Assembly (NCBI RefSeq): GCF_964204865.1 | Contig: NC_135253.1 | Location: forward strand, 3,658,001-3,722,000 | DNA length: 64,000 bases | Reading direction: 5' to 3' | DNA from: Styela clava | Taxonomy: Eukaryota | Shown here: in pieces, positions 42,601 through 64,000 of the stretch | How positions within the stretch are numbered: position 1 is the first letter of the stretch | How the letters are laid out: each line of letters begins with the position of its first letter | Notes under the pieces: model-generated | Seen by the model: only the letters and a program-made list of their open reading frames with translations | Database searches by the model: none | Told to the model about the DNA's origin: nothing | Position numbers and translations under genes: made by a program

Positions 42601-45600
42601 TTGCAATAATTCAGTTCCAATTTTTTGCAGTGACTTTATTTTACTTGACTTTCCAATGGCTTGAAAAGGAGTGGGCGTGATTATAAAATCCCGAGGTCTA
42701 ATGGTGGCTGACTGTGTGTAGCCTACAGCAAGAGGGCTACGGCGGACCTCGGTCCGAATACGGACCTTCCGAGTAAAAAAATTTGGACCGCAGCTGCTTT
42801 TTGACTTCGAATGCATCGTTTCTTTTAATTTCATAATCGTAATCTATTTTTTGCTTAACCACTGGGTATAAATTGTCATAGCAATTTAAGTTTCTCAGAT
42901 CATCGACTCACTTGTTCATACTCTAAGCATTTACTATCCAGCAAGATCAATGGTGGGGTAAATACTGAAGTTATAGCGCCGTTTGGTTACATTTTTTGCA
43001 TATTTTTAGACACGGTGGTAAACATTAGTCTGTTTTTGTGGCTTTGGATGCTATTTGTCACGTTTTAGTTGTATTTTCGAAATTTAAAAATAGTAATAGA
43101 TCAATGACCCAATTTTGAAGAATAGCATACTCTCACTGGCTAGAAACAAGATAGAAATAGTTGGCACAAACGAAAAAATGTAGTTTCTCAGACTAACGAT
43201 TCACAAATAACTTGCTATTGGACACAGAAGTTTTCAGCATGAAAAATAATTCAAGTCGCTGGAAGACTTCTAAATATATAATATTTCAGATCTTTCGAGC
43301 AAAGTCGGCGCTCAGCTACGCGACTGAACTTCAGTGAAGTCTTGTCATAACGGGACCGAAGCGCGATATTGAACATTGTTCCTGTACTTTGTCAAACGAT
43401 GCATTTGAATAGTTTGCATAGTTAGGACATATTTTTTGGAATGACCTGACCCCGGTAATTTTTTAATTTTGTGTACGGACCTTAGGTGAAAATAGTTGAG
43501 TAGCCTTGGCCTACGGTATTTATTTAGTACGGTAATTATATAAGGTAGGCCTACAGCTACAGGTGAACTCGGAATCGTATTTACTGTGTTGGCAGAGACA
43601 TTGCATGGTCAGGAAGGTATTTTATTTTTCTCGTTACTTTATTTTATTGGACACGATGCGGTGAAGTCATCAAAATTTAAAATTGCGCATCTTGTGGCGG
43701 CCCCGCGTTCGCGATTATTGTGATCTGATAGTCAGACGAGGACCTCGAGACTGTGGTTCTGGTAGTCAACGAGGATATATACTCATCGCGGTAGTCTACT
43801 GTAAAATATTAGATATCCGCACTACTTCGTTTCAGCTTCTTTTTGTTATGGACCTATGGATCGTTTTGTCATTTTGTATTTTTCTTCTTGCTATTGTTTC
43901 TCATTAACTATTAGATCAATTGCTTTAAAATTCAGAGGTTAAAGATTGATGTTGTCGCTTCTTCACTTCGAAGTTTTGTGTGATGATCTCTTCAAAATTA
44001 ATAAAAATTATTTGTAGCGGTTCTATGACCTCTCTCGTGCTGCAAAAGTGTGGGGAGTTTTTTGACCGTACCGCACAGTAGACTAGATAGGGTAAGTTAC
44101 TGCATAAGATAAGGTATACTACTGCTTCGCTATGGCTTTCATGTCCATTTATTCGAGAATCGTTATCATATTTCGCTAGAAGGCTATTACTTTTATTTAT
44201 TCAAAAAAATTCAGTGGGCCCTTTGAGATTCTGTGTGCGATGATGCCATCAAACTTTGAAAATGCGCAGTTTGAGACTGTTCCGGGTTCGCTATATCTGG
44301 TGATCAGGAGAAGTGAAGACTGAGGTAATTATTCCTGGTATTTATTATAACGGCGTGCTAAACAGCACTGGATGAGACCATCGAACGTTAAACGTACGCA
44401 AAGATTACTGATATTGTTACGTTCTGGACTTCGTTTGTGATGTTGGCGGACCGCAAACGATGCCAACGTCGTCGGATTACTTCGGCCCACTAAATTCAAT
44501 CGTTCAAAGCGCTATCTTTCCCAAATACAGGAGACCAATAAATAAAGGTTATATGCTGTAAAGTTCAGTTATATTTTTGTATTATTTGAAATAGAAATAT
44601 AATATATTTGTATGTTATAAAATGGGTAGTGTATTAGTGAATATCATAAAGAAATACTTGCAAGCAGCATAGAAAGTTCAGCATAAATCAAACAGGGTAA
44701 GTTACATTTACAGTATCCGTAAGTATGCGCATCTATTTTATTCCGCATCACCGCAATATACGTGAATTTTAAAAACTAACCAGAGCGTCATCCACATGAA
44801 ATAAAAATGAAAAGGAGTAATGTTGTAACCAGTAATAAAATGAATCTTGTACGGTTACACTGAAAATTCCCACTGCCTTGTCAACGACTTGCCAGTCGCA
44901 ACCGGTTTATAGTAGTGAGTGCAGAGGCGATTCTTTATCGAAATAATATTTATAATATATATATATTTAGTCTTCGGTAACGTAAACACGGTCTGGGTAG
45001 CATATGATAGCAGCTATATATGTTGTTACAGTTGAAACGTGCAGAAATTTTAGATTTCGTTCAAAATTGCAGTAGCTTACTTTACAATCGCGTACAGGAC
45101 GGATGCACAAAAAAAATAAAATGTACAAAATTGTTTCATGTACTACATTACAGAAATTAGTAACCCATTCAAAAAGCGTAGTGTAATGTGAAAATAAAAT
45201 AAGAATACATTTCTCGTATCGCAATTTGTATCTTGAAACATGTGGGTCAAGTCAACACAAATTTTCGAGCACCTTTTGTATAAAAATCGAAAGCGGCACA
45301 ATGAAAGGAAACTAAAACTTTCTTCTGCATAATGCAAATTTAACAATGAATTTGAAGTAATATAAAATATATAGAATGTAACAGCGTTTAGGGTAACTAA
45401 ATAACCATTAGTGGAAGACGTATTTGAGTAAACAATTTTAACGGTATTTTGTATACTTATTTTGGTCCCGTATTTTTGAAACTTTCGACAAATTAATGCT
45501 AGGTTCAAGGGCGTTGGTTTTTAGCATTTATTACTCGAATAACGTTTTTTCTTAAATCTTGTTCAACAAAGCTGATGTGAACGTAAATCATCAGCTTGAA

Positions 45601-45919
45601 TTTTGGAACCATCAAATGCATACAATATGGGAAATTTCAATTAATGTAAATTAGAAAACAGATTTGAGGTAAGATCTGCTATCAAAATTGATTAATCGTA
45701 CTTGAAATATAAAATCGTTAATTAGATAGCACCTTGTCATAAGTATTTCTTAAGAATATAATATCCGTCAGTGTCTTTTCTTGAAAGTATTTTCAATAAT
45801 AAAAACTATAAGAAAATCATATCCTTTCATCACCATTTTTATACATATTCACCATACATATATGGTGTGTTTCTGTGATCGATTGTGGTCACCTGATTAG
45901 TATTTGCTTCCATATCCAA

Positions 45920-48900
45920 TCATCCAAGACTGCTGCGATTGCTCTTTCTGCCTTCGCCGTCCTGTGATTTGTGTTTTTCTGCGTATTCTTTTTGTTTATC
46001 TCCTTCAAACAAAGGTAAGAGTCGTAGGTTTGTATCTTTATCCAAGACGCAACGTTGCATTAGATCAAGATATGTCAGGTTTTCTTTTGTGTTAGGATCG
46101 AAAAAACCTTTCGTGTCATCAGATGGGTCTTCTAGAATTTTCTGCAATCTTTCGTCAAAAAGTCCTCTCTCAAATGCAACTTCAACCGGGAGTCGATGAT
46201 TGGCTAGCGGGTCAATGATTCCTGAAATCATATTGAAATTGAAAAAAAAAGTTTCAGTGATACAAAAGAACGCAATACCAATAATTGTGTATTTTTCAAT
46301 TTTATTGTTTCATTTCATTCACAGTTATTGAAACACTATGCTTTGTTCTGCAATGTGCAGTTAGATAATATGATATATATATATATATGATTAGTTATAT
46401 ATATTGACTTTTTCTTGTCGTTACAAATTTTTGAGTAGTACTAATGTTAAGAGGGCTCGCCAGAAGCTACAAATTACTAAATAATACTTTATTTATTTTT
46501 AAATCAACATATATTACTAAATTTAAAATACCTCCTGTGGCAATTTGTGCTTCCAATAATCTTATTCCGTGATTTTCAACAACAAGCTTCCTTTTCATGG
46601 CTTCAAATAAGGACAATGGTTGAGGGGCAAGTCGTGATACATAACCATGTACTGCGCGCTCAGCTCTTTGTAACACAACTTGAAACTGTCGATCAACAAG
46701 GTCTTCCTCGACAGCGTCTTGAACAGACATTTTTCTTGCCGTTACAGGGTTAATAATACTCCCAGTAGCGGCTTGTGCCTCAAGCAAGCTGAGTGCTGTT
46801 CCTCGTCGGATAATTCCCTTTCTGCAGGCATCCAGTAGGGACATTTTTTCTCCGGTATCGACTTTAATCAAACCAGCGATAGGTTCGTCTCCAACCAGAT
46901 ATTGCTTGAGACCTTCCTGTACTTCTTCTTCGGTGACTTCCCCAAACTCCAACTTTTTGACAGTCGATTCCAATATCAATCTGGCTCGTATTAAATCGAG
47001 TAATTTCACCGCCTTTCTCCAACCCGATGTTAGGACAATGTCGTCTCGCTTTTTACTTGGTGTCATTCTAGGTGTCTCGGGTGCCTCGTCTTCAGACGAT
47101 GACGAACTTGATGACGAAGATGATGTTGAATCGCGGCGTTTTTCTGCTTCTACCGATGGAGCAGCCTCTACTGGTTGCACTGTTTCTTCTACAGGTTCAG
47201 GCGTATTTTCTTCTTCCTCGTGTCCAGATTTAGATGATGCACTGGATGAGGAAGATGACGTTGAATCGCGACGTTCTCGGTCAGCTTCCACTGGTGGAAG
47301 GGCTTCTACCGCTGGCAGCTGTTCCTTCTGGTGTTCATTATGTTTGTCTTCATCTTCTGACTCAGAAGAAGAACTAGAGGAGGTAGAGGACATAGAATCG
47401 CGGGGGCCCTGTTCTGCTTCTGATGTTTGTGAAACTTCCAATTTTTGCGTAGTTTCTTTTTTAGACTCATTAGATTCATCCCCGTTTTCTGAATCAGACG
47501 ACGAAGAAGACGATCCGGAATCCGGAGGTGTTTTGCGTGCTTCCACAGTTGGAAGAACATCCGGCAGCACTGAATCCTCCAGCGATTTGTCTGGTTTCTT
47601 ATATTCATTTTCCGAGTTGCTACTAGAACTGCTGCCTGAACTGGTCTTTCTTTCTTTTGATCTAAAAGTTTGTGTTGGTACAGCGATTGTTACTTCTGTC
47701 TCCGAATCGCTGCTACTTGAAGAAACAAGCGATTCTTTATTTGGCAGATCTTGAGCTGCGTTGCTACTAGATGACGAGACAGTTCTATCTTTATTTTGTG
47801 GACTTTTATTTTCAGCTTGAACAATCTCACTATGTATTTCTTCTTTAACTTCGTCGTCTGATTCACCTGAACTGGAAGAAGATGAAGAATGACCCGATTT
47901 TTCAGAATAGTTAATATCCTCTTTGTCTGCGGCAAAGTTTCCATTATCTTTGGTCTGGTCGATCTCGTCTTCCGATTCGCTGCTACTGCTGCTTGAAGAC
48001 TTTCCCGCGGAAACGAGTTCACCAATTTTTACATCAGTTTCCTGTTTAATTTGTTTATCACCATCGCCTTTGGTGCCATCGTCTTCAGATTCACTACTAC
48101 TGCTCGAAGAAAGTTTATCTTTAGTTTTAACGTCTGGAACAATTTCTACATCAATATTTTTATTTTCACCATCAGATTCGCTGCTATCACTACTACTGGA
48201 CGATTCTTTTTGTTTTGGAAATTCCGATGACTCGCCACCCGTTATTGGTTTCTTCGTAATATCATCGATTTCTTTTTCGCTGTCAGAATCGCTACTACTG
48301 CTAGAAGAGAGTGGTTGATCCTTTTCAGTAGATTTTTGACTCTTGGGCTCAGAATCCAAATTCTTTTCGTTCTCCGATTCACTGCTGCTCGAAGATGATT
48401 CAGTCGCCTTATCTTTCTGCTGGACATCTGAAGAAAGCTCTTGATCAGTTTTAATTTTCTTCTCGTTGTCAGACTCACTGCTGCTGCTGGACGATATTTT
48501 TTGGACAATGTTTTTTGGTGATATGCTTGCAGGCCCATTTCTTTGTCTTCTGGTTTCGTCATCAGATTCGCTACTACTGCTACTCGATGACATGCCCACT
48601 TTTGCTTTAGTCTCTGATTTATCAGATACAATTTCGTCTTCACTGCTACTTGTTGACGACGTTCTTGCTTTCACCAACTCTTTATCGGGTAGCAATATAA
48701 CAGGTTGTTTGCTATCATCATCGGATTCCGAACTTGAAGACGATGAAGAATGTTTTTTCTCCAAAGCCCTCTTATCACCAAAAATCGGCACCGCTGTCTC
48801 TGCGTCGTTATCTTCACTGGATGACGAAGAAGAAGATTTGATAACATGACTCTCTTTTTCCATTGCTTTCTGTTGAATTGGAGGCATTTGTTCATCTTTT

Positions 48901-51900
48901 TTGTTATCATCATTTTCCGACTCTGAAGATGACGAACTTGATTTTCGATTAACAGCTGCTTCGAGTTGACTGTCTTTTTTATTCGAATACCTTTCTTCAT
49001 CATCAGATACTGAAGATTCTGATGACATTGACTCTGCATCAAGGCTAATTTTTTTTGGTGCCACCAATTGTATGTCAGCGTTATCTTTAACTACGGGTTC
49101 ATCTTTTGTATCTTGCTCCTTTTCAGATTCACTGCTTTCGCTGCTACTACTCATTGATTCGTGCACATCGACAGGCTTCATGTGCAAGGTTTCTGTTACT
49201 CCAGGTTTAGATTCATTTTTTTCGTCTTCCGACGAAGATGAGGAAGAACTGCCATCACATTTTGGGGAGGTTAGCACTTGATCTTCTATCTTTTTCGTTT
49301 CACCTTCGCTTTCGGAACTACTGCTCGATGTTGTTTGTTTGTGTGGCGATTGATAAGATGTAATAGTCACAGTCTCTTCAATCGGAATATTCGGGGTTGC
49401 AGTGATTGTTTTGCTTTCATCTTCTGATTCCGACGAAGTACTACTTTCTGAAGACATTGATACATCTTCCTTCTTTTCACTCTTTGTTGGATTATCATCG
49501 TCGACAACCACGTATGAAGAATCACCAGAAACAACAATTTCTTTTTGTTCGCTATCGTCACTAGAGGAACTAGAGGTCTTTCGTTTTGTCGGCATTGACT
49601 CGGGTTCGATTACTACATTGATTTTTTCATCATTATCAGATTCACTGCTTGACGACGACGTCTTGTCATGTGTTTGCGGCGGTTCCTTGACAACCATGAC
49701 AAAATCTGGTGATTTTGTTTCTCTCTCAATTTTTTGAGATTTTTGTGAATCCGAATCAGAGCTGCAAGATGAAGAGGATTTCGTCGACCCACCAAGTAAT
49801 TCCTTGCTTGCGGCGTCACAGTCGTGATTGGAATTTGTTTTCCCTGGTTTCTCATCATCAATAATTACAAACGAATCTAGAGATTTTGGTTGCTCATCAC
49901 CGCTTCCTCTTTTTGGGGACGCTATATAGTTAAAGTCTGAACTTCCAGAACTGCTTGACGAAGTTGACTCCTTTCTTGGAAAAGTTGGTGCTGCGTGTTC
50001 TTTCTCTACATCATCGACAGAAACGGGATAAATATTTTCTTCTTTATCATCGCTGCTGCTGGATGAACTACTACTACTTCTTTTAGCATATGTTTTAGGC
50101 TCTATTTGGGGGTCATCAAGCCTATTTTCTCCCGCGCTAACGTATGAATTCGAACTGTCAGAGCTGGGTTTCTCAGCTTTAATAACTGGTACAGTAGTCG
50201 ACTTCTCTTCATCGCTAGTACTGGATGATGATGACTGTTGAAATAGGAATAATAAGTTAATATATGTCATATTAACAAAATAAAGAACAAATGTTAGGAG
50301 TTTGTGTAAATAAATAAATACCAATAAAATTATTATTTATTGAACATGTAACTAAGGCTAAACATGTGTTCGTATGCGTATTCCAATGTAGCCTAGTAGA
50401 TACCTTTGTTGATGATTTTTTAATAGACCCTGGACTCGTGCTATGTTTTTGTAATAACTTCATATCTTCTGGATCATCAAAATCAACCTCTCGAGTGTGT
50501 CCACCTTGCTTGAAAACTACTCTTCCGTCTCTATCGGTGGTCACGTGGGGTTCATCGACAGGAGATGGTGTTCTGTGCAAAGTCAATTATTGAATATGAT
50601 ATCGTTAAGCAATCAATCGTACTTGACATATGAAAAAATTTGCGAGCTACTGAACATAATTTATGTGGCATAATTTACCTGCTTCGAGATTGTACCGAAT
50701 CCTGCTCATCTTTATTAGCGGCCAGACTTTCAAAATACTTTTTTCTTCTTGAAACTCGACCCTTAGAAGTTTGCTTTGCAGATGATGACGATGATCCACT
50801 TGAAGAAGGTTTTGAATCTGATTCTGAAGAAGACGAACTTCCTTCTTTAGGTAACCTAGTTATATAAATCATTGTGAATATAATTAAATCGGAATAGAAA
50901 GAAAGTTGAACCACGACAGCTTATACATTAGGATCTTGTGAACTTGATTGTATTCCTGTCCCCAGTTCTATTTATCACCACGAATTATATTATTAGCCAA
51001 GCGATGCCAGAAACATGAGTCTCTTATTGGCAAATGTGGTGTAATTTCACGAATAACTGTTTTATATTTTTACTCATGCTTTATGTTGAAATATGAAGTA
51101 TTGTATTTTTCTTTTGTTCTATAAATTATCGTAATATTTTTTGGTAACATATGCCACCAACCTTCCAGTCTTGGGTTTTTTCTTTGTTAACCTCTTTTTT
51201 TTACCAGAGGACCCAGATGACGACGACGATGATGATAATTTCTTTGGCGCAGACTGTTCACTACTTTCTTCGGCCAGTGGTACATTATCAGACCTAGTAT
51301 TTTGAATTTACGACATTATTAGTATAACAAAAGAAAATAAATGAAACCCGTTTTAATGAACGTAAATAGTCAAATGAGCCTGATCCATATCATGAGAAAA
51401 TACATATCATAAGACACAATAAATACATAATTTTCCAATCATTATTAAATGTTAGAATAGTAGAGGACTTGGCTAACCTATAAACCGAGGAGGCTGAGAC
51501 AACTGATTCAATGCAAATACTGCAATTTACTGAAATAAACGAATAATTTTATCATAGAAAAATAATAACCAACTGAGAAATTTTACATCGCTGTGAAAAT
51601 CAGCGATGATTGTGAGCGAAAAAACACAAATAGCTTGCATGGCAATTTTATATCGCTGTGAATCTCAGCGGTATTGATATATTGTGAGTAGAAATAAGAT
51701 ATCAAACAGATGCCTCACATCACAAATGGGCACAAATAACTCACACGAAATAAATGAACAGGTGTATCAGAATTAAAGTAAAAAAACTTTGGATTCGGGA
51801 TCGTGTTCGACTGTACATTGATGAATTGTCCTCACTTGTGCGGCGTTAAAGATAAATAACCAAGCTCAGAAAGCGAAGATAACATCGGCAAGTTTATAAA

Positions 51901-54900
51901 ACCATACATTTTTATATTTGGTATAATAAGGCCATAATGCAACACTTATGTAATACTTATGTAACAATGAACCTCTTATTAAAGATTTGCGTAATTTACC
52001 ACACTACGCCGGAATTAAGCCTATTTCATCGATGAAACGTCAAGTAACGTTCGACAAGGATGATGAGAAGCGGCCTGATTGCCTTTCCCCATTCCTTTAT
52101 GACATATAGGTATATAGCAAAGGAAATATTGCTAGTCCGATAGGATTTCCTCAAATTTTAATCTATACACTAAATAAAAAGAACTGATATCATACCAGTG
52201 AGATTCTTTACATACTATATATATCGTTTGAATACTAAATAATATTTCACCTTTTCAAATTCGCTTCCGGGTCATTTTCTTGCCTGCCTAGTCCGGTATC
52301 TGTAGACATTGTGTGTTGCAAGGTGTTAGTGTGTTTGTCGGTTGCGTCATCGGACTTTATTTGAACAGGCAAACTTTTCACTGAAGTTTTCTTCTCTTTG
52401 TTTTCGGAATCTTGATCCGAACTCGAAGAAGATGACGAGGACTGACTCGAAGACCTAAAAATTAGAAAAGAAATTTATTGTCGATGATTTTCGGGTACCA
52501 CTTTACTAATCGATCTCAGCGGTTGTGTGATCTCAGTTATTTTAGTATTAACCTAACCAAACGATAACAGCGTTAGAGACTGAATCTATGAGATGTCTTT
52601 ATGAGATTAAACGCATACCAAATTGCGTGACACTTTGGTATGCGATTGAGTTCACGTTAAGCAAGTGATATCACATACCAAAGTAGTTTTATGATGCTGA
52701 GATCGCCTTCCAAAGCAGAACCAATTTTTAATCTGTTTACGAATACCTAGGAAAGTTTCCTTTGCGTTATCATATGAGAAATCGGGAATAAAGTTGAAGT
52801 TAGTCAGTATCGGATAATCCCGTAAAACACGATTCATTTATTACTCATCAACTTGGATTTAATTTTATCATGTTACTGTTGCGTCGAATATGTTTAATTC
52901 ATTTATCAGCTCATAAAGCTGTTGCTTGGTCGAATTTCAACGAGTGGAGATACACACAATTGTATATTCGCTGAGAAAAACTGCTTTGAAATATTCGAAA
53001 CATTTTTATAAAGTAGTGTGTGGTACTCTAAGAAAAATTTCTATTCACTTGATCTGTTCTTCAGGAATCTCTAAATCTTCATCTTTTTCGAATTTCCTTA
53101 CAGCTGGCAATGGTGCAGCAGTTTGTTTGGGTTCTTCACTGACAATAAATGGCTCGTAATGCTCTATTGGTTCTTCAACCCTTCGAACAACTGGTAGTTC
53201 ATCCGCGTGGTTGGATTCATTTTCTTTGTCCGAATCTGACGACGATGATGATGAAGACGAAGACGTTGATTCTGCAGATGAGTAAGCATGCAAATGGAAT
53301 ACTTCCAAATATAATAAATAAAACTAATACCTATGAGCAGAAACCAATTATGTTACGATTTCTTTATTCCCGCTGTTGTATTCAACGAATGACAATAACT
53401 GTGTTTTAATTATATGATGTCTAAAATCGTTGTGTATCGAATTACTAAAATATTGCAATAACTTTACATGATCCTCAGACGGAAGATGCAGCGAAAGACG
53501 AGAGAGTATATTACTTTATGACCGAGTTCTTAGAAATAAATACGATTAGACATTTTGTATCATGATTTTACACGAACACGAGCGGCAAAATGATGAAATG
53601 TGCCTATGTTTTGTTACGACGATGATGCTGACGCAAAGTCGAAAACTGGCACACCCTCCCTGCGTAGATTTCCTGGATTGAATATCAAGAGCTATAAGCT
53701 AAAATTCATATACACTCGAACAGTGTCTTGAAAAGTCTTCCCGAATATTCAGCCTGAAGCTTCCGTGAAAATATCACGCAGCGATTTTCCATCTCGAACC
53801 ATTTAAGAACGTTAATCAATACGAGAGAATAAAACTCGATAGCTCTTTACCTATCAATGCCTACCCAACCAGAGCATTTTCCAGGGCAAAGGCTTGATAA
53901 AACTCTCACAATAAGAACACCAAGACACCGAACGATAATCAAACCAACTTCAGTCGTTAGTTTTACATAGTTTAAATTGACTTTACCAGTATACGGATAA
54001 AAGAATGATGTGCATTGTTAGGAAGCCAGACAAAAATTAAAATTGACTTTCAGTTCCTTCACCCAGTAACCAATGTCAAACTAACGTTTGAGTGGTATAA
54101 ATTCAAAACACCCGCCACTAAATAAATTATTGGTGCATCCAGTGTTATTATTTAACTAATATGATCATGCGCTGGTGTGGATACCGACATAGCATCAGCA
54201 AGTTTGCTTCGATTTTAGACTGTTACCGTAGCCTTTCCACCGCTTCTCGCACTAATAGCCCAATTACATAATAACACCCAGAGATTGTTATTTGGAAAAA
54301 ATTTAATTATTCGATATTTGATTAATATCATGACAGCAATATTAATGTTAAGCATTATTTGAAAATATTAATGATAATCTGCATGCCATAACCAAAAAAA
54401 TTGAATTATATATAATGAATAAATTAATGAAAATAATGCAAATATTTATGATATGACTGTCGGTTTTATGTTGAATAAATAAATTATGGTTCCAGAGTGC
54501 AAATATAATATATATAAATAATTATGAAACATGTAAATAACAGCAAATAGGCGAGAAGCGGCAGAATATAAAAGGCATTTGACAAATCTTATAATGCTAT
54601 GACTGAAATCAACTACTTTGATTGGTCGAAAAATTTAAAAAAAAATGGCGATTGTAAGCGTTTCTAGTAGTAGTGTGCAACTCCGAGACTAGGTATGGTA
54701 ACGTATTATGCCAAATAGAGTCGTGATGAAAATTGTTGTCAAATGCAAGTGGCGTGTACATGCTTTTCAATAGTGAAAATGTTCGATTATTCATGCTGAA
54801 AATTTATGCCTTTGTAAAATTATTTGAGAAAACAGACGAAAAGACATCACAGTATGTTCAGCAAAAAAGAAACAAGGTAGGTTGGGAGACATTAATTATA

Positions 54901-57900
54901 ACTTTTAGTAATGTGCGCACGACTCCGAATTTAGCATTGATTTGAATTGTAAATTATTAGGCTAGTCAAGCCGTAAAACTTGAGCCAGTTACTTGAAAAT
55001 TGTTGGCAATTTTGATGCGATAGCATGGTAATCTCATGGTCCGAATTGAAGCTAACATTAAACACGCGTTGACAAAATATGAAAATAACAGAACAAATCA
55101 TTAAAATTTCGCCCCCAGTTTCAAATTAAGAAAAGCTGCAGTTACTGGTCAATAACTCAATAGCGTATTTAATCTGGTCTGTTGTTGTGAACAATACAGA
55201 AAAATAGACCCAATTTTCTATCCCCCATGCAATTATTTCGCTTGCCAACATTAGACATAGGACTCCAACACTGCCACCAGAAAGTAGTTAAAGGAAGTAA
55301 CGAACATGCAGGTTTAAATTCACTCATTATAGGAAAACGAAACAGAGGAAAAGAAAGTGTGAGAAGGTCACTGTTATTAATATAGTGTCCCAAAACGTCG
55401 AAGAATTAGGCAGCGCCTACTTAGGTATTCATTCCGAACCTTTCTCTTTGACGTCGTCTAGCGGCTTTTCGTTTGTTTGATTTTCTTTGACGATGCTGAG
55501 TGGCGTAATTATTTCCTGCTCTTCTGGTTCAGGTTCTCTTTCATCATCTGATGAAGACGAACTTGAACTTGATGACGGCACTTTTTCAACACTAACTTCA
55601 GCCTCCTGTGTAGGCTTATCGACCTATAAAAATAGGGAAAAAAGTCCAAAATTATATCTTCACCCTAAAGTCTAAACCAACCTTTCTCAACTGGAAAGGA
55701 TTTCTTTTTCAGGAAGGAATTTCGCAGTTCTAGAGTAGGAATTCTGATTTGTATTAGCTGTAGTCTTACTAATATTTATTATTTTTTCTATTATAAATAT
55801 AAAACTTATTCATGAAAACATAAACAACTTAAAATGCACAAAAGCGGAAGTAAGAAATGAAGATTTCAGAAATAGGCAAAGGGAGGAATTTAACAAAGAA
55901 AGATTTGGAGCCAACGCCTTGAACTTTCCGATTTAATACAACTTGTTTTTTTCCACTTGTTGCAGGTATAAAAACATTTCACAATGAAATACCATTGAAC
56001 CACAGCGCGAAAAAAACATAGCTATTTTACCAGTAATTTTATATGAATATTTAGATTTTCGAAATGAGATAACATTTTTCTTCCATCTATCAATTATTGT
56101 CAGATCAGAAAATAAATTTGTTAATACAAAATTCACTTTGAGACAGAATAAATTAAATTACAGCATATTTACACTAAATAGGTTGAGGTTTTAACAATAC
56201 AAGATGCAAGATGTCTTCATGTTGTTAATATCAACCAAACAAAAAACCACACAATAGCAATCCCTCATTGTTAGATGTTCATTGTGTGTGCGTGTCATGG
56301 CCGCAGCTGCCATGCAGCGTCGATAAATTAAACGACATGGGAATAAATGTAGCGCAGGCAATGCTTTTGCAATTAATAATCTGATAATCGAAAAACGGCC
56401 TATTTATATATTGATATCAGATTTAGATTTGGATTTGGATTTTATGTTTTAAACTCCAAGTAATGCTGTATACACGTATAGTCAGTCATTCACATGTACT
56501 AGGTAATTAGTTCAGATTAACCTGCTAGAAAGATGACGGTTCATATAATAAGACACAATAGATTCCAGCAGCTCCTTACGTATCAACTATCAGTGGTACC
56601 TAACTTTTTCCGTTGTGAAAAAGGTAAAGACGTCTCACGATAACAAATAAATATTCGTTTTAACCGAGTTAATATATAACACAAAATTAATACATTATCG
56701 GAACGTGCCATGCATGGACAGCGATACCGACCACGCAAATCAGGGTCAATATCCCTACCATATTCGTTTGTCAAATTCACTTGAAATCAAGCCTGTCATT
56801 TGTCATGGTTGTTTCAATATGTGATATATATTCATGAAAATTGGGATTAGCATTTATATTATGTATATCAGTCAGATTGTCTGTCACCATTCAGGTCAGA
56901 TTACATGTTTGTTGCAATGCTGTAACCAAATTCGAATGCATAATAAAGGGTATTTCAATAACATGATACGAAGCTGAAATAATATATGAGACTGTTAGAA
57001 TGGCATATTTGAAATATTTATAACTGTGAAAGCACGTTAGCACAAAACGATAAAACCATAAATTGTATGAATGCTATGAGCTACTTTTCAACTTCTTGTG
57101 TATTTTCTAGAAATATTTCGAAATTTACTCGCAATAACACAATATTGAGTGTGTGTTGTTTAACCTGGCTGGGATCGAATACTGAATTACGTTTTAGCAA
57201 CGGAAAATGTGGTTTCAATGAATGCCCGATGAATACCACTGGAATCCGGTCCACAGTTTTTGACAGTTTTTTAAAAACAAAATAAACGCGCTGATTCACC
57301 TCTGAAAAATCTCGTTTAACGAAAGGGTAAAATAAGTATTAGGCATGGTATTAGAAAACGTCGTGAACCGTATCTGAACTGAAAAACACAGCAAGCTTGA
57401 CATTTCGTTTTTAAAATGAAGAGTCGAACAGACGTGAAGGCAATTACATACACACAATATATCGTAAATAAAGAGTAAATTATATGCTTCTAAAGAACAT
57501 CAGACGGCTCACTGTGTGTTCCAACTCCCAAAACTGTGATAAATGGTTAACAAAATTATATGTCACGGTGCAGAACCCATAAGTTATATAAATGTGACAC
57601 AATAGCATTGGATTTTCGGTCGGTTATGAGGAAAACCAAAAAAATGGTTTATAATCTCATAATATAACGTAATTAAATCCTAAAATGGGCTTGATAAATA
57701 TTTTAGCGATATTTTCACCTTCTTCTCTGGTGACTTTTTGCTCTCCCGCTTTTCGAGCTGTTTCTGTAGTTCTTCAACAAATGGATCTGACTTCTGAGCA
57801 AAAAGACAGAACGAGTATCAACATGTATTTGAATGGGTCGTATTAAAAATGCAGTCTCGAGTTGAAATGGAAACGATCGATACTGTTTCACATATAATAT

Positions 57901-60900
57901 TATTCCCAAATTCAGTGAAATATATTGCGAAATTACGAGTTTTTATCATGTTGTTAAAATACAGCATAGCAATGAAAGCTATATAAAATTTACTCTGAGC
58001 AACTGACAAAAATGAGAGTTATTAAAATGCGCTAAATGTGTCGTACCCAAAGTTGGCAAAATATTGTCCTTGAGCTAATGCACCAAATTAATTAACAAAC
58101 ATTTGAGTTTTCAGAATAGCAATGCCACACGTTTTTGTAAGACTTGGCAGTAAAAGACGACAAAACAGGTCACATGACGAGACGATTTAGTCGGTTCGAA
58201 TAAATTATTCACTACATCCAGTCCTATAGATATGAGTAGATCAAGGCATATCCATTCATATTATCGCGCATAGCTCATTTATATCAATCGTAGGCCTTCG
58301 ATCTCCACAATACTTACTGATTCATCGGCTCCCGGCATGAGATGCTTTTTCCCTCGTACAAGACTGATGGCCACTTTATACGGTGCCGCATAGCTCAATA
58401 CGTTTAACGCGTCTTCATACGATATTCCTTCGTAAAATACTGTAACACTTTCAATGATATCACCTGTGTGTGAGAAATTGAAATTTAGTTAACAAATTTA
58501 CTTCCTCGCACATTTTTTGTTGTCATAAATATATATATATATAAACTTTTCGATAGAGTGGAATCAATTTTTGCTTACCTGAATTGCAGTATACAATTTG
58601 TTTAGCTCCCGTAAAAATTGACCCCGCTATATATATGAAAGCTCAATAGCTCAATGTAAGAATGAGGTCATTCAAATGGCGATTGGAATCATATATATAT
58701 ATTTGATATTTATGAGGCATGTATAATAAATCGAATTCTTCTAATTATGTTCTATTTATTACAACAGTTAATATCCAATATGAAATTTGAGATGTGTAAA
58801 GGTGAATCCATTTTTAATGGTATTATTTGACTTAAATGGCTATCTCATGTTAAAACCATGACTAGACGTGACAAAGATGAAACAACATTTAATGCTTCCA
58901 AATCTAAACGCATTTACTATTCCAAGTTGAATTTAAATTGGCACAATTCGACTCATTATAATTAACGATATACCTTCCAATAATTTTCCCTGTGCAGGAC
59001 CATCTTTTCTGATATCACGAATAAATATATTTCCATCCTTATCCGCGACTATGTTGAATCCATTTGTTGAAGTTTTCTTGTTCAATACGATCGTATGAAC
59101 TTGGTCCTGATAATAGAATTTATTTATAAAAAATTAAATACTCATTTCATATCAATTACACAACTTTTAGAAATGAATCACAAAATTTAATGCACCTTGC
59201 TTCCATCTTCCGTTTTTATATGACCATTTGCTGGAATGCCTTCAACGTCCACGGCGCGTTCTTGAAAACCCTGAAATAAGTATTCTGTATTTTCATCATG
59301 GAATTTAAGTTTTAATCGAGAAAAGCATGACGCTATAAAGTTTGACTTAACAGTTCATATAACATAGTGTCTTGAGGATTTGATTAGAATTACAAAATAA
59401 TATTTGACTTATTGTTGTGTGTCACAAAACAAAGCCAACAACGGGAAATTCTGAAAGGCAACATATTGGATGATACTCTCATGAGTGGACAGAGCACCCC
59501 ACTTCTTTATAGATGTCGCATCGTGCCTTACTCAACAAGATTGTTTGATTCTCTCATTTGAACTAATTTACAAATGATTGTTTTATTGATGCTCGAGACC
59601 ATGACGTAACGTATAATTTTTTTTAAAATACTGACAAATTTTATAATGATTCAAGGAAGGAATATCCGTTGCTGGCAATAATTTCAGCGAGATAAATGTC
59701 TCTTTGTTATGCAATAGCAAAACCCATGTAAATACCCCAATCCCATCATAAAATGGATTGATACGTTGATCGAAAAAAGACGTATCAATGTTTTAGAGCA
59801 GTGATTCCCAAAGTGGGCGATATCGCCCCCCGGTGGGCGAAAATGATACAGAAGGGGCGAAAAAGTCGAAGGGGGCGATAGGGGGGCGATTTCGCGAAAA
59901 CTGGTTCTGCTCGGCGCATCGTGCACTTGATTACTGTGCTATGCGTGCTTTCGTGGGTTTGAATCACATGGACGATGTCACACGCGAAGGGATTGCTGTA
60001 CTCGTCTTCGCAGTAAGGTACGGTAGTTTGCGTATCCCAGTGATCGGGTAATCTGGCCAGGGACGCTGAATGGACCTTTCCCCGACCTTTGACCCCGGAT
60101 TCCCCCCCGGAAATTCTTCCCATACTTTACCATTCTAAAATTTTCGATGCTTATTTTAGGAGTGGTTTCGCGAGTTGTTGCCTATAAAGTGAAGGATTTG
60201 TTTCAAACTATCATTCTAATTTATACCATTCAACAATCTGTTTTTTAAAAGTACCAGTAAAGAATTTTAGCCTAGTCTATCACAGCTATTTCTACACTAA
60301 TTTTTGATTACTGCAATTAAATTAAAACTCCTAGGAGGATAAGGTGATCATTGAATTATTTTTATTTAAATTTCCGAAAAACAACTAAAAACTAACGAAT
60401 ATAATTCAAAATCGCAAAAATGAGGTAATGTTCACGACCACGCCTGAAAGTCTGGCTGAGTGAGGAATGTGTCTGAGTGGATGCGAAAGGGGGCATTGTT
60501 ACGTTTATTTTTGCATCTTGCTGATTGGCCAATGTCACCAAAGTAAACAAGGAAGTCTATGCCAGGGGAAACATCCAAAACGGCGGTTTTACCGATGAAT
60601 TAATTTTATTTATTATCTACGCTCGAAGAGTAAATTACATTTTTTACGTAACAGAATTTATCGTGAGACACGTTTAGACTAAATTTTATCATATCCTAAA
60701 AATTATATTGAACAGCTACTCGTTTAACGAGCCTACAATTTAATTACAATGAGACAAATGAAAACACGCAGAAAAGTTGATGCTGAGTGCAGGGGTTTAA
60801 TAGCGCAGTGAATATTCGAATATATTACAATGCAATAGGGGAAAAAATTCATATTCTATTCGAGAGATTCATCACTGCTTAATTTTTGTAAGAATGTATC

Positions 60901-63900
60901 TTTTTAAAGAAAATCTTTATCAAAATTTCACAAACCATGCAAAAACATTCACTTCGATGTTTGGAAGTACATATTTGGGCGAACAAATATTTATTAAAAT
61001 GGACATTACAAAGAACAAGCAAAGAACTAGGATTAGTGACTAGGATTTAGAAAATCTTCCAATCTTGGCGTCGTAAAGCTATCAAGCGTGATGCTGCAAC
61101 AAGACAGTGTCACATTAAATGTCATTGTAATAATTTTTTAATAAGACGACTGAGTTGAGTTCACGAATTGTCGGAGTTTTTGCACGATGTTCCGTTTTTA
61201 ACTTTCAAAAAATATATGCGATTCGCAAAAGAATAGCAACCCTAAATTTTGTCCCGCGAGCGACTCAAAATTTGCCGACCCCTGAGCCATCCGAGTCCAC
61301 AAATCCAAAACAAATGGCTGATTAATTCTATGGACTGGTGATCGGACTGTAGGACGTGGTAGGATGAGGAATGGGGATGACTTTTACCGAATACCGTTAT
61401 ATATCATGTATTTTGGTGAAGGTCATCAGGCTGTAGGGATGAATGGGATGTACCTAAATCATTATTATAAGTTTTGAAAATTTAATTTTGTTTTCATTCC
61501 TTTAATTTGAAACGGGGTGAATTTAGGGAGTTAAATGCTATAAGGCAAGAGTACGCGGCGGTTTTTAAGGAGGTAGAACCCTGGATTCTTTCATTTCCGA
61601 CTTTTGATATGTTGAAAAAGGGGTTTTCAGCCGTGACACTATTGCTATCAAAACAACTAAATCGCCTTTCCATCAGTAAACGGGGTAATTTTAGATATAA
61701 TAAAAAACTCGCCGAAGAACACCAAGCTCATCAATCTCATTGAAAAACACTATAAACTATGATTTGTCTTCTTATTTGGTCTGTAATATATTCGTTTCAG
61801 ACTTTCAATTTTTTTTGCAGTGCCGGGGGGGCGATGAAGTTGTATAAACTAGTTTAGGAGGGCGGTGGTACAAAAAGTTTGGGAACCACTGTTTTAGAGG
61901 ATGTGTGGATATGCAAATAATCTGTCGAATGTCATCAATGTGAATGTGTTTTGCTGGCAACAAACTATAAGCAAGCGAAAAAATAATTAGTGTTGAACAG
62001 CCAATACCTCATGTTGGAATGCTTGAGCGGGTGGTTCTGACCTATTCGGTTCAGTAACAACTTCTTGAAGTTCGCCTTCCTCCACTTTCTGTGCTTGACC
62101 ATTTTCTGCAAATGAAAAAGAAACATTAAATTTGTGAAAGATTTGTACCGAGGTAACTTCGTCAATGTTACTTGGCAAAACAACTTTTACAACCGATGCT
62201 TTAGAAGGCAAAAAGTTGTAAAGTACTGTTTTCATGCTGATGTACATGGAAGTACATTACGAAACTCAGTGTGACGAGAATTTTGGATGAAATATTCACT
62301 GCTACACAAATAAATACAAGTACCAAAAAGGCTTGAGGTGCACACTTCAAAATTGAATTAACAAAACAGAGGGATGGAGCAATATATTCTACAGCATGTC
62401 TGTCTAACATTGACTCGTTAAAGATTTATTGATTTAAGGGTATTTGTATTTTTAGAAGCATGCAGGTTAAACAGGATAGATTCTAGGAAAGTAAAAGCAT
62501 TGTTGAAAAGAAATAATATTGTGTAATATCACTGTAGATATAAGAAAAGAGTAAGGGAGGGAAAGTTCTGGGCTCATTTGTTCTAAATCTAAATATTAAT
62601 GTAAGTTTAACATTTATCATAATATAATTATATCATCGTTTGCGATATGCATTGGGTCGCAAAGAAAAAGATTAAAAAATGTTAAGCAAGTAGTTTGTGA
62701 TATTAATATGGATGTTTGATACATGTAATATTATAATTCATATTTTCATGAAAAAAAATCCACGAGAGATTCTGGAAATTCAGAAAACTTGGTCGTTGCT
62801 TTGAAATTTTCTTCATCTGATTCAAATTTACGGTGACATAACGTTGGGTACTTTTACTTTACTTTTAGCGCAGTATGGAAAGTCACATAAATTCTATATT
62901 TGTCTCATGCTGTTCAGCCTAATAGTTTCTACAATGGGCGTTAGAACTATTCGCATCACTGATATTTACGGTATGCCTACGCTAAGTTTCGTTTTTGGGC
63001 AATTTTGGTATGTTTGTTCATCGTACCTATTCAAGCATAGACAAGTAATGCCATTATAACAATGCTGTTTTAAGAGATTTTACCTGCAAAAACGTTACGC
63101 ATATCAACATCCATATAAATTCCTCCGATGTGAGGGATTAAGAACACTGGGTATAGTTGTTTTTTGACTTATTTATGCAGATAAATGGGTTCATGATAGC
63201 TAACATTTGCATTAATAGCGTGCATTGGTGAAAAAATTTAGTTTTTTTTTTTTTTATAATGTTCTGTATTGTTTACATCAAGACGTTTCATTTATATTCG
63301 CGTAAACCCACAATGTCAGACTTTTCTTTGACAGATTTCTTCAAATTTAACCACACTTGCATTATTGCAATACACACCACTTAAATATGTCAGATTTTTA
63401 CATTCAATCGCACAATGGGACCCTTTCACCTTTTTCCATGAGTCCTATGAATACGATTTAACTACTCAGAAAAAATTCTGAATTTGAATCAAATCGAATT
63501 AGGAAAACAGGAGACCACATATTCAGTATTGCATATTACGCTTGTTTGTTTTATTAAAATTAGAAAACAAACCGCATTATGCATACATAACGACAATGCG
63601 GTACAAATGAAAACGAGTGTCAGATTTAAACCAAGTCGATGGGATAATTGTTAGTGCTTGGATGAAATTGAAGAAATACCAATGTATAGGATAGAATCAT
63701 AATTTTTTCACATTTTTTGTATTTAGTTGTTGGAAATTACATATAGCAGCATGTGATTCAAACTTAAATAACATAGTAAAGGTTATACTACTAAAACCAA
63801 TGAGTGAATTAGTAGTTTGCTTGTTATGGCATTGACGACAAATTTAAGGCAATTCCTTTTTACAAAAATAAATAGAGTAACGTGTACTGCTTTTTGTAAA

Positions 63901-63925
63901 TCTTACCGAGAAATTCAAAACTCAT
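45920..63925 (-). CDS. PDZ (AHNAK/periaxin-type) + poly-Ser/acidic repeat + plakin-repeat-domain protein; 14 coding exons, about 1879 aa
   Basis: Exons (- strand) 63925-63907, 62105-62008, 59270-59196, 59106-58974, 58463-58318, 57793-57719, 55623-55440, 53271-53049, 52454-52251, 51293-51162, 50855-50679, 50572-50404, 50234-46532, 46221-45920; all GT-AG, phases consistent, total 5640 nt; in-frame TAA directly before ATG 63925. The first exon is the least certain. Confidence 0.85.
46010..47045 (-). other. Single plakin (plectin) repeat domain with its preceding linker-like segment
   Basis: [49 protein letters not shown]...[14 protein letters not shown]|[47 protein letters not shown] are canonical plectin/epiplakin/desmoplakin PRD motifs. 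Confidence 0.92.
58318..59106 (-). other. PDZ domain of AHNAK/AHNAK2/periaxin type (two exons)
   Basis: [43 protein letters not shown]|[36 protein letters not shown] resembles the recalled periaxin/AHNAK2 pattern (GIFV.....DSPA....LQEGDQLLS..VFFEN.KYEDAL..LQ..EPYKV.F.L.R). Confidence 0.8.
59799..61891 (+). mobile_element. Deleted hAT (Charlie/Buster-like) transposon in an intron of the PDZ-plakin gene
   Basis: TIRs CAGTGATTCCCAAA / TTTGGGAACCACTG; exact 8-bp TSD TTTTAGAG (59791-59798, 61892-61899); C-terminal transposase relic at 61507-61743 (FPT....[21 protein letters not shown]...HQAHQSH). Confidence 0.9.
60749..61284 (+). mobile_element. Nested second hAT remnant (GTF2IRD2/EPM2AIP1-like transposase family)
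   Basis: N-terminal relic [10 protein letters not shown]-terminal relic [27 protein letters not shown], right TIR TTTGCCGACCCCTG ending at 61284; left end not identified. Confidence 0.7.
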
Positions 63926-64000
63926 TTAAAATAAGACCTAACCGCTGCAAATGGTGTTGCTACTGATATGCATGCCTATGCTGTGACTTGAATAACTTTC

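What the first reader, a model, noticed from the sequence alone, without database searches (positions are those of the whole stretch)
45920..63925. AHNAK/periaxin-type PDZ fused to a plakin repeat domain through a long poly-Ser spacer
Seen: 14 phase-consistent exons give one ORF of about 1879 aa with an N-terminal PDZ, about 1400 aa of low-complexity Ser/acidic sequence and one C-terminal plakin repeat domain (PRD). No actin-binding CH domains, spectrin/plakin domain or coiled-coil rod were found. Established: PRDs bind intermediate filaments in plectin, desmoplakin and epiplakin; the PDZ of periaxin and AHNAK2 is an atypical homodimerising module with the VF(F/Y)E..YEDAL..L....PYKV signature; the AHNAK family is characterised mainly in vertebrates and lacks PRDs, and classical plakins lack PDZ domains. 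Inference: this is an undescribed cytolinker that dimerises or docks at the membrane via the PDZ and tethers intermediate filaments on a long disordered arm, and it may link the evolutionary origins of AHNAK/periaxin and epiplakin-like proteins. Automated annotation would probably label it only as plectin- or dentin-sialophosphoprotein-like.
Basis: partly seen in the sequence, partly recalled or inferred. Interest (0 to 1): 0.9.

Follow-up and report, generated by a model that had tools for sequence, protein, structure and literature searches.

The report
Sea-squirt PDZ–plakin-repeat cytolinker gene
A real, expressed sea-squirt gene joins a periaxin/AHNAK-type pairing domain to a desmoplakin-type filament-binding domain through about 1,400 disordered serine-rich residues. 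It probably starts with a membrane anchor, and I found this combination described nowhere.

Summary
On the minus strand, two small exons (59106-58974, 58463-58318) encode a PDZ. Its only clear solved relatives are AHNAK2 and periaxin. Seven Ser/acidic exons follow. A 3.7-kb exon then runs from Ser/acidic sequence straight into a complete desmoplakin-B-type plakin repeat domain, which the last exon finishes.

RNA-derived contigs from three studies show GT..AG junctions from the exon before the PDZ through to 53271. One 3.2-kb contig must reach the giant exon.

Three points need correcting:
A phase-compatible exon 4.3 kb beyond the window encodes a signal-like segment plus a transmembrane helix, and it matches the N-terminus of the one named relative, a 341-aa Ciona protein labelled "pinin-like".
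- Read-through of intron 7 yields a roughly 320-aa PDZ-only isoform, as in S-periaxin.
- The plakin repeat domain is 78% identical (local pieces) to one in a PDZ-less tandem neighbour. The fusion therefore looks like ascidian exon shuffling, not an AHNAK–epiplakin ancestor.

Most likely this is a membrane-anchored, PDZ-dimerised tether for intermediate filaments. Filament binding, membrane topology and the 5' end are inferred, not shown. It is a new variant of known kinds and of moderately high interest.

The parts
63907..63925 (-). It is phase-compatible, but nothing supports it.
   Evidence: Sequence read. No homology. The RNA loose ends cannot tell it apart from the external exon 1.
62008..62105 (-). 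Exon 2 (98 nt, phase 1 in, phase 0 out): [13 protein letters not shown]...AFQHE.
   Evidence: AG/GT boundaries and phases. RNA contigs run 171-175 nt (X1, X6) or 246-248 nt (X8, X5) beyond 59108. 171 nt equals exon 3 minus 2 nt plus exon 2 exactly.
59196..59270 (-). Exon 3 (75 nt, phase 0-0): [25 protein letters not shown].
   Evidence: In all four runs the loose-end consensus next to 59108 is the reverse complement of ...ATGGTCATATAAAAACGGAAGATGGAAGCA (sequence).
58974..59106 (-). Exon 4: N-terminal half of the PDZ ([20 protein letters not shown]...GKLLE).
   Evidence: Joint 58461|58972 (CT..AC on the plus strand) in 4 of 4 runs. Periaxin 4cmz E 0.034 and DLG PDZs. 43% identity to Ciona P0126 residues 104-150.
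58318..58463 (-). Exon 5: C-terminal half of the PDZ with the AHNAK/periaxin signature ([33 protein letters not shown]).
   Evidence: AHNAK2 4cn0 E 1.2e-7 and periaxin 4cmz E 3.4e-5. 68% identity to Ciona P0126. Single copy in the window's own genome. Joints confirmed.
57719..57793 (-). Exon 6 (75 nt, phase 0-0): [25 protein letters not shown].
   Evidence: Joints 57793|58318 and 55621|57717 in RNA contigs.
55440..55623 (-). Exon 7: the first Ser/acidic exon.
   Evidence: Contigs X5 record 11 and X8 record 22 carry exons 3 to 7 in one piece.
54296..55439 (-). Read-through part of intron 7, giving an alternative 3' end for a PDZ-only isoform of about 320 aa. The stop comes 3 codons after the donor (...KEKGSE*).
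   Evidence: Contigs 54545-55469 and 54490-55469 are continuous with exon 7. Their depth is 18-50% of the exon's, against 0-7 in the other introns. ATTAAA lies about 10 nt before the end of cover.
53049..53271 (-). Exon 8: Ser/acidic.
   Evidence: Joint 53271|55440 in X6 and X8. X8 record 19 (3,227 nt) runs a further 3,125 nt past 53200.
52251..52454 (-). Exon 9: Ser/acidic.
   Evidence: AG/GT boundaries, phase 2 in and phase 2 out, open frame. Not seen directly in RNA.
51162..51293 (-). Exon 10: a Ser run followed by a basic stretch ([11 protein letters not shown]).
   Evidence: AG/GT boundaries, phase-consistent.
50679..50855 (-). Exon 11: Ser-rich.
   Evidence: AG/GT boundaries, phase-consistent.
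50404..50572 (-). Exon 12.
   Evidence: AG/GT boundaries, phase 2 in and phase 0 out. No Pfam family.
47028..50234 (-). Giant exon 13, linker part: about 1,069 codons of Ser/Asp/Glu/Lys-rich sequence.
   Evidence: One frame is open for 1,289 codons. Composition. No homologue found. No tandem repeat.
46532..47027 (-). Giant exon 13, PRD part (plakin repeats 1 to 4, ending ...LLEAQIATG|G).
   Evidence: Desmoplakin 5dzz E 1.8e-65 and 1lm7 residues 4-167 E 8.5e-38. Pfam Plectin.
45920..46221 (-). Exon 14: the end of the PRD ([21 protein letters not shown]...LLPLFEG), a 27-aa tail and the stop codon.
   Evidence: 1lm7 residues 169-245 E 4.9e-39. Phase-1 acceptor restores ATGG-IIDP. The neighbouring gene has an intron at the same position.

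Best explanation
This is one ascidian gene of 14 exons and about 1,950 codons for a modular cytolinker. Its parts, from N- to C-terminus:

(i) Probably a signal-like hydrophobic segment and one transmembrane helix, followed by basic residues. This would leave only about 8 residues outside the membrane and the rest in the cytoplasm.
(ii) A juxtamembrane PDZ of the AHNAK/periaxin type, which pairs two chains as an intertwined homodimer.
(iii) About 1,430 residues of disordered Ser/Asp/Glu/Lys sequence with about 100 CK2-type sites. This would act as a long, probably phosphorylation-tuned, flexible arm.
(iv) One complete desmoplakin-B-type plakin repeat domain, which holds intermediate filaments.

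The dimer would thus hang two filament-binding heads from a membrane. A second mRNA reads through intron 7 and ends early. It gives a PDZ-only protein of about 320 aa that could pair with the long form and lower its valency, as S-periaxin does with L-periaxin.

Shown: the domains, the splicing of exons 3 to 8, expression and the read-through.
Inferred: exon 1 and the membrane anchor, dimerisation, filament binding and the regulatory role of the short form.
For: Domains.

One transcript: RNA contigs carry exons 3 to 7 in one piece and show the joint to exon 8. X8 record 19 runs 3,125 nt past 53200. Even unspliced, that ends at 50075, inside exon 13, which starts at 50234. The linker and the PRD share one 1,234-codon exon. 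All phases and splice sites are consistent.

Anchor: the exon at G000:C4:3726315-3726555 has a phase-1 donor that matches exon 2. Its hydropathy reaches 2.67 over 19 residues. It is 44% identical over 45 aa (E 9e-8) to the N-terminus of Ciona XP_026689828.1, which has signal peptide/TM, PDZ and Ser-rich tail in one model. AlphaFold2 gives that helix pLDDT 80-92. The tandem neighbour also starts with a TM exon with a phase-1 donor.

Dimer: ipSAE 0.67 against a best control of 0.00. By calibration the mark was reached by 21 of 30 homodimers and 0 of 23 monomers. The runs agree in at least 89% of contacts and pLDDT is at least 73. Periaxin and AHNAK2 PDZ domains form intertwined dimers (PMC7072810, citing Han and Kursula 2014).

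Ligand present: intermediate-filament genes lie at 6 or more loci. Envoplakin groove residues K1901 and R1952 are kept as Arg (PMC4782060).

Short isoform. The Ciona 'isoform X2' of 341 aa has the same layout.
Against: - Exon 1 was never seen joined to exon 2.
- Our exon 1 has 30 residues before the hydrophobic core, which is unusual for a signal peptide.
- The junctions of exons 8 to 14 were not observed.
- The dimer pass was obtained on the Ciona orthologue, not on this protein. It may also reflect the model's memory of 4CMZ and 4CN0.
- The PRD has a net charge of about -5. Two of the four mappable groove residues are not basic (R1895 to V, K1994 to L), as in the weaker B-type domains.
- No orthologue with a PRD could be shown in another species.
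- The monomer fold of the Ciona PDZ was of low confidence (pLDDT under 50).
Confidence: 0.6

Rival explanations
1. The same PDZ–linker–PRD protein, but soluble. It would start at the reader's mini-exon (63925) or at another non-TM first exon, and reach membranes only through PDZ-mediated or other protein contacts, as AHNAK and periaxin do.
For: The mini-exon has an ATG, a GTAAGA donor and phase 1. Contigs in X1 and X6 stop at the 5' edge of exon 2, which could mark alternative upstream exons. AHNAK and periaxin have no TM segment (PMC10682155, PMC7072810).
Against: The mini-exon has no homology support. The TM exon matches the Ciona protein at E 9e-8, and in Ciona it sits in one model with the PDZ. 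The paralogous neighbour also begins with a TM exon of the same phase.
Confidence: 0.22
2. The PDZ and the PRD rarely or never sit on one protein. The main product would be the short PDZ-only form. The Ser/PRD part would be made from an internal start or be a separate transcription unit.
For: The read-through of intron 7 is abundant, at 18-50% of exon depth. The only database relative is a short 341-aa form. Ascidians trans-splice (own knowledge), so internal 5' ends are possible.
Against: The spliced joint 55440|53271 is present in two runs, at depth 73 in X8, on a 3.2-kb contig that must enter exon 13. Exons 8 to 13 have no in-frame start context, and their phases continue the upstream frame.
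Confidence: 0.08
3. The architecture is right, but the PRD does not bind intermediate filaments. The protein would then be a heavily phosphorylated acidic scaffold, for example at the ER or nuclear envelope or as a Ca2+/cation buffer, with the PRD used for another partner.
For: The PRD has a net negative charge, and two groove positions are non-basic. PRD-A and PRD-B types have weaker grooves (PMC4782060). Plakin repeats in fly Shot act at adherens junctions in an animal that lacks cytoplasmic intermediate filaments (title of PMC2173965, plus own knowledge). Ser/acidic tracts resemble Nopp140- or pinin-type phosphoproteins.
Against: The last-exon segment of the PRD is roughly 70% identical, counted by eye from the alignment, to human desmoplakin PRD-B. 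Desmoplakin PRD-B binds vimentin in vitro (own knowledge: Choi et al. 2002). The genome encodes intermediate filaments.
Confidence: 0.1

Closest known systems
Periaxin (PRX), AHNAK and AHNAK2 (vertebrates)
   Same: The PDZ is of the same subtype; these are the only solved PDZs with E below 1e-4. The PDZ sits near the N-terminus and is followed by a disordered tail of more than 1,000 aa. The gene layout is small PDZ exons followed by one giant exon. A long form and a PDZ-only short form arise by intron read-through (PMC7072810, PMC10682155). A homodimer is predicted.
   Different: It has no 128- or 165-aa AHNAK repeats and no PEVK or AHNAK2-homology regions. The tail is Ser/acidic and ends in a PRD. 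It has a probable TM anchor. It comes from a non-vertebrate. The linker has no detectable homologue.
Desmoplakin, plectin, envoplakin and epiplakin (plakins with PRDs)
   Same: It has a complete 4.5-repeat PRD, colinear with desmoplakin PRD-B. The top database hits for the PRD are vertebrate epiplakins and plectins at 41-50% identity.
   Different: It has no plakin (spectrin-repeat/SH3) domain, no CH domains and no coiled-coil rod. Dimerisation would be by a PDZ instead of a rod. It has a single PRD. Epiplakin itself is reported absent from Ciona and lamprey (PMC8782857).
Ciona intestinalis XP_026689828.1, 'pinin-like isoform X2' (341 aa)
   Same: The order of parts is the same: signal-like segment, TM helix, AHNAK-type PDZ (68% and 43% identity to the two exons) and a Ser/acidic tail. 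Its size is close to that of our predicted short isoform.
   Different: This model carries no PRD. Whether a longer Ciona isoform carries one could not be checked. It is not annotated as a PDZ protein (Pfam PDZ 17.7 bits, below the 23.2 cut-off).
Tandem neighbour, G000:C4:~3735962-3758850 (outside the window)
   Same: It lies on the same strand. It has an N-terminal TM exon with a phase-1 donor, the 'ERAVDV' motif, Ser/acidic exons, and a PRD 78% identical (local pieces) to ours with the same intron position.
   Different: It has no PDZ and three PRDs instead of one. It is a signal-anchor type without a separate signal-like segment.

Membership tests
AHNAK/periaxin-type PDZ | Sequence closer to the AHNAK2 and PRX PDZ domains than to any other PDZ, including the VFF(E/D)x(I/F)xYEDAL...(E/A)PYKV signature. 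| tested here: met
   Exon 5: 4cn0 E 1.2e-7 and 4cmz E 3.4e-5, with the next hits at E 0.6 or worse. Ciona orthologue, whole domain: 5.9e-8 and 2.6e-7, against 0.03 for DLG1. No tree was built.
AHNAK/periaxin-type PDZ | Intertwined (domain-swapped) homodimer. | tested here: inconclusive
   The model of the Ciona orthologue (residues 100-192, two copies) scores 0.67 against a best control of 0.00. It has about 250 contacts, and strand 153-160 pairs with its twin. This is a prediction, may come from the model's memory, and was not run on the window's own protein, because the exons were not joined.
AHNAK/periaxin gene family (orthology) | Small PDZ exons, then a giant exon; long and PDZ-only isoforms. 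| tested here: met
   Exons 4 and 5 (133 and 146 nt), exon 13 (3,703 nt) and the intron-7 read-through. The comparison rests on PMC10682155 and PMC7072810.
AHNAK/periaxin gene family (orthology) | Central AHNAK repeat units or periaxin repeat/acidic regions; shared intron positions within the PDZ. | tested here: not met
   The linker finds no homologue at E 1e-5 or better and has no tandem repeats. Intron positions in the vertebrate genes were not compared (not tested).
Plakin family (PRD-containing cytolinkers) | A complete plakin repeat domain (4.5 plectin repeats). | tested here: met
   Pfam PF00681 is over its cut-off in both exons. The domain is colinear with 1LM7 residues 4-245.
Plakin family (PRD-containing cytolinkers) | An N-terminal plakin domain (spectrin repeats/SH3), with or without CH domains and a coiled-coil rod. 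| tested here: not met
   No such Pfam family was found in any exon at E 0.1-1 or better.
Plakin family (PRD-containing cytolinkers) | A basic groove that binds intermediate filaments. | tested here: inconclusive
   Of the envoplakin residues that could be mapped, K1901 to R and R1952 to R are kept. R1895 to V and K1994 to L are not; desmoplakin PRD-B also has L at the K1994 position (PMC4782060). Binding itself cannot be tested with these tools.
Single-pass membrane protein | A hydrophobic helix of about 20 residues followed by basic residues, on the same mRNA as the rest of the protein. | tested here: inconclusive
   Helix VVASVFGTLGFVFLVALIVYLI followed by RRSLK (Kyte-Doolittle 2.67). It is conserved in Ciona (pLDDT 80-92). 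Its junction to exon 2 was not observed.

The most novel reading that the evidence does not exclude
Ascidians have a small family of single-pass transmembrane plakin-repeat proteins: this gene and its tandem neighbour. These would tie intermediate filaments directly to a membrane, without the integrin/cadherin-plus-plakin adaptor chain of vertebrates. This member would also be the pre-vertebrate representative of the AHNAK/periaxin lineage. That would show that the dimerising PDZ, the giant-exon layout and the long/short isoform switch are older than vertebrates and older than myelin.
Probability: 0.35. Interest if true: 0.75.

Novelty: new variant of a known kind. Interest (0 to 1): 0.62.

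Why it matters
Plakins and AHNAK/periaxin are treated as separate families. AHNAK and periaxin are described essentially only in vertebrates, and the epiplakin study I read found none in the sea squirt.

A natural protein that replaces the plakin rod with an AHNAK-type PDZ, and probably adds its own membrane anchor, offers two things:
- a simple test bed for how dimerisation and spacer length set filament tethering;
- an outgroup for the origin of the periaxin/AHNAK PDZ and its long/short isoform control, which matters for CMT4F and PRX-linked cataract biology.

It also shows that automated names such as 'pinin-like' hide a PDZ that scores below Pfam's cut-off.

Tried and rejected
- PF26220, listed on many fish 'epiplakins', is not this PDZ.
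- Searching 1.84 billion representative proteins with PDZ exon 5 gave only 8 hits. None was long and none carried a PRD.
- The Ciona protein found only itself among proteins of 188-597 aa.
- The linker found nothing.
- The PRD search was swamped by multi-PRD vertebrate proteins, so single-PRD orthologues could not be seen.
- The single-sequence AlphaFold2 model of the Ciona protein was too poor in the PDZ (pLDDT under 50) for a fold search, so none was run.
- The ESM Atlas gave only generic PDZ clusters.
- No Rfam family was found in 45000-64000.
- tblastn found no second PDZ at the other PRD loci that I fetched.
All searches were exon by exon, by reference.
- The organism name Styela clava comes from earlier notes of this scan only. 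I checked merely that the closest named relative is from Ciona.
Full report
**What is there.** The window is G000:C4:3658001-3722000 of a 377-Mb assembly. The genome is AT-rich, at about 35% GC. Earlier notes of this scan call the organism the ascidian Styela clava. I did not verify the name. The closest named relative of the gene is from Ciona, which fits an ascidian.

On the minus strand between 62105 and 45920 I find 13 exons. With one more exon outside the window they make a 14-exon model. Every intron is GT..AG and the phases are consistent. The model is 5,862 nt, or 1,953 codons.

**The three modules.**

- *PDZ.* Exons 4 (59106-58974) and 5 (58463-58318) join at a phase-1 junction (..KLLE-G-DIIES..) and encode a PDZ.
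  - Exon 5 alone hits AHNAK2 (4cn0, E 1.2e-7) and periaxin (4cmz, E 3.4e-5) among all PDB chains, and nothing else of note.
  - Exon 4 hits periaxin and DLG PDZ domains weakly.
  - Pfam's PDZ model stays below its cut-off. This explains why automated annotation misses the domain.
- *Linker.* Exons 6 to 12 and the first 1,069 codons of exon 13 give about 1,432 residues.
  - Composition is 25% Ser, 21% Asp+Glu and 10% Lys. There are 33 Ser runs at a median spacing of 37 residues and about 100 [ST]xx[DE] sites.
  - There is no DNA tandem repeat, no other Pfam family and no detectable homologue.
- *PRD.* The last 165 codons of exon 13 plus exon 14 form one complete plakin repeat domain.
  - It is colinear with desmoplakin PRD-B: 1LM7 residues 4-167 (E 8.5e-38) and 169-245 (E 4.9e-39).
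  - PRD-A, PRD-C, plectin and envoplakin score lower.

**One transcript?** Thirteen public runs hold the stretch. Five hold about 18-19% of its words, which is about the exonic share.

I laid four runs from three studies on 53200-59199. Their contigs show these joints, all CT..AC on the plus strand:
- 58461|58972 in 4 of 4 runs;
- 57793|58318;
- 55621|57717;
- 53271|55440.

Single contigs (X5 record 11, X8 record 22) carry the upstream exons together with exons 4 to 7.

X8 record 19 (3,227 nt) starts 30 nt inside exon 7, crosses into exon 8, and runs 3,125 nt beyond 53200. Even without any splicing this ends at 50075, inside exon 13, which starts at 50234. If spliced as modelled, it ends near 47940.

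The linker and the PRD share one 1,234-codon exon. So the PDZ, the linker and the PRD lie on one mRNA unless there is an unseen internal event. I could not look at junctions E8 to E14 directly, because read laying allows one call of 6 kb.

**The 5' end.** It fits the phase but has no other support.

The whole-library search with exon 5 found only eight proteins. The one with a name is Ciona intestinalis XP_026689828.1, 'pinin-like isoform X2', of 341 aa. It has a signal-like segment, a TM helix followed by KKKKKR, an AHNAK-type PDZ and a Ser/acidic tail. Its PDZ matches the PDB as follows: AHNAK2 5.9e-8, periaxin 2.6e-7, next best DLG1 0.03.

An exon 4.3 kb beyond the window (G000:C4:3726315-3726555) encodes MLRSN...FTGIFLLCNVGSAFAQCPSVAVPVVASVFGTLGFVFLVALIVYLIRRSLK. 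The evidence for it:
- It is 44% identical over 45 aa to the Ciona N-terminus (E 9e-8).
- It has a strongly hydrophobic 22-residue helix.
- It ends with a phase-1 GTAAGT donor that fits the phase-1 acceptor of exon 2 (62105-62008).
- RNA contigs extend 171, 175, 246 and 248 nt beyond 59108. 171 nt is exactly exon 3 (minus 2 ambiguous nt) plus exon 2. This supports those two exons but not the identity of exon 1.

I rate the TM start as likely, at about 0.6, but not shown.

**A short isoform.** Contigs continuous with exon 7 run on through its donor to about 54296. Their depth is 18-50% of the exon's, against 0-7 in the other introns. The frame stops three codons after the donor (..KEKGSE*), and an ATTAAA lies just before the end of cover.

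This predicts a PDZ-only protein of about 320 aa. That is close to the 341-aa Ciona model and analogous to S-periaxin and the 17-kDa AHNAK (PMC7072810, PMC10682155).

**Context in the genome.**
- The PDZ type is single-copy.
- Plectin repeats occur at 6 or more loci.
- One of these loci is a tandem neighbour on the same strand (C4:~3735962-3758850).
  - It starts with a TM exon (MEGW-VIAVVVILALLMLGISGLVGYLLY-RPRH) with a phase-1 donor.
  - It shares 'ERAVDV' with our exon 3.
  - It continues straight into Ser/acidic sequence and has three PRDs.
  - One of those PRDs is 78% identical (local pieces) to ours and has the same ATGG|IIDP intron.
  - It has no PDZ.
- The two PDZ exons form a 279-nt cassette in phase 0-0.
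- Intermediate-filament genes lie at 6 or more loci.

Taken together, the PDZ was most likely gained or lost by exon shuffling between local paralogues.

**How it probably works (inference).** A membrane anchor places the PDZ next to the bilayer. The PDZ pairs two chains. The homodimer model of the Ciona domain scores 0.67, against 0.00 for the best of three controls. The calibration marks were 21 of 30 dimers and 0 of 23 monomers. The runs agree in at least 89% of contacts and pLDDT is at least 73. The pass may come from the model's memory of 4CMZ and 4CN0.

The Ser/acidic arm acts as a long spacer that can be tuned by phosphorylation. The B-type PRD binds filaments. Two of the four mappable envoplakin groove residues are kept as Arg (PMC4782060), while the domain's net charge is about -5. 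The short form could cap the long form.

**Known or new.** No paper in the library combines an AHNAK/periaxin PDZ with plakin repeats. A plakin study reports no epiplakin in Ciona. No database protein with both domains surfaced, within the limits of those searches. I class it as a new variant of known kinds.

Noticed in passing
G000:C4:~3735962-3758850 (L003-L005), 14-37 kb beyond the window's end, minus strand: A tandem paralogue. It has an N-terminal TM exon (phase-1 donor), a PPYSP motif, 'ERAVDV', Ser/acidic exons, three PRDs and a C-terminal tail, but no PDZ. Together with the gene studied here, it suggests a family of membrane-anchored plakin-repeat proteins.
   Followed up: partly
window 54296-55439 (-): Read-through of intron 7 with sizeable RNA cover and an ATTAAA near its end. 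It gives a PDZ-only isoform, parallel to S-periaxin and small AHNAK.
   Followed up: partly
window 55453/55440 and 57790/57793 (-): Minor alternative joints in single runs. X6 shows a donor 13 nt upstream, with 8 foreign letters. X8 shows an acceptor shifted by 3 nt, with TTT in between. These may be alleles or assembly noise.
   Followed up: no
P0127 and P0128 (unnamed Logan assemblies): C-terminal halves of an AHNAK-type PDZ (..YEDALTILSYA(A/S)PY..) followed by a shared HPVYRSxS motif. They point to further unannotated carriers of this PDZ type, from organisms that are not known.
   Followed up: no
G000:C9:22902065-22903445(-), C6:13905854-13906198(+), C6:5972542-5975175(+), C19:1313237-1337789(+): Other plakin-repeat loci in the same genome. 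They include single-PRD genes whose pre-PRD segment (..SGWRRTVKLTELIRAKLIVE..) resembles this gene's, and a large multi-PRD gene on C19.
   Followed up: partly
window 59785-60123 (-): A 112-codon ORF in intron 2, inside a locally GC-richer patch. It is probably a repeat or a relic.
   Followed up: no
window 62101-62008 (-): Exon 2 holds an out-of-frame ATG in a good context (AAAATGG), which opens a short overlapping frame. This matters only if some mRNAs start at exon 2, for example by trans-splicing.
   Followed up: no
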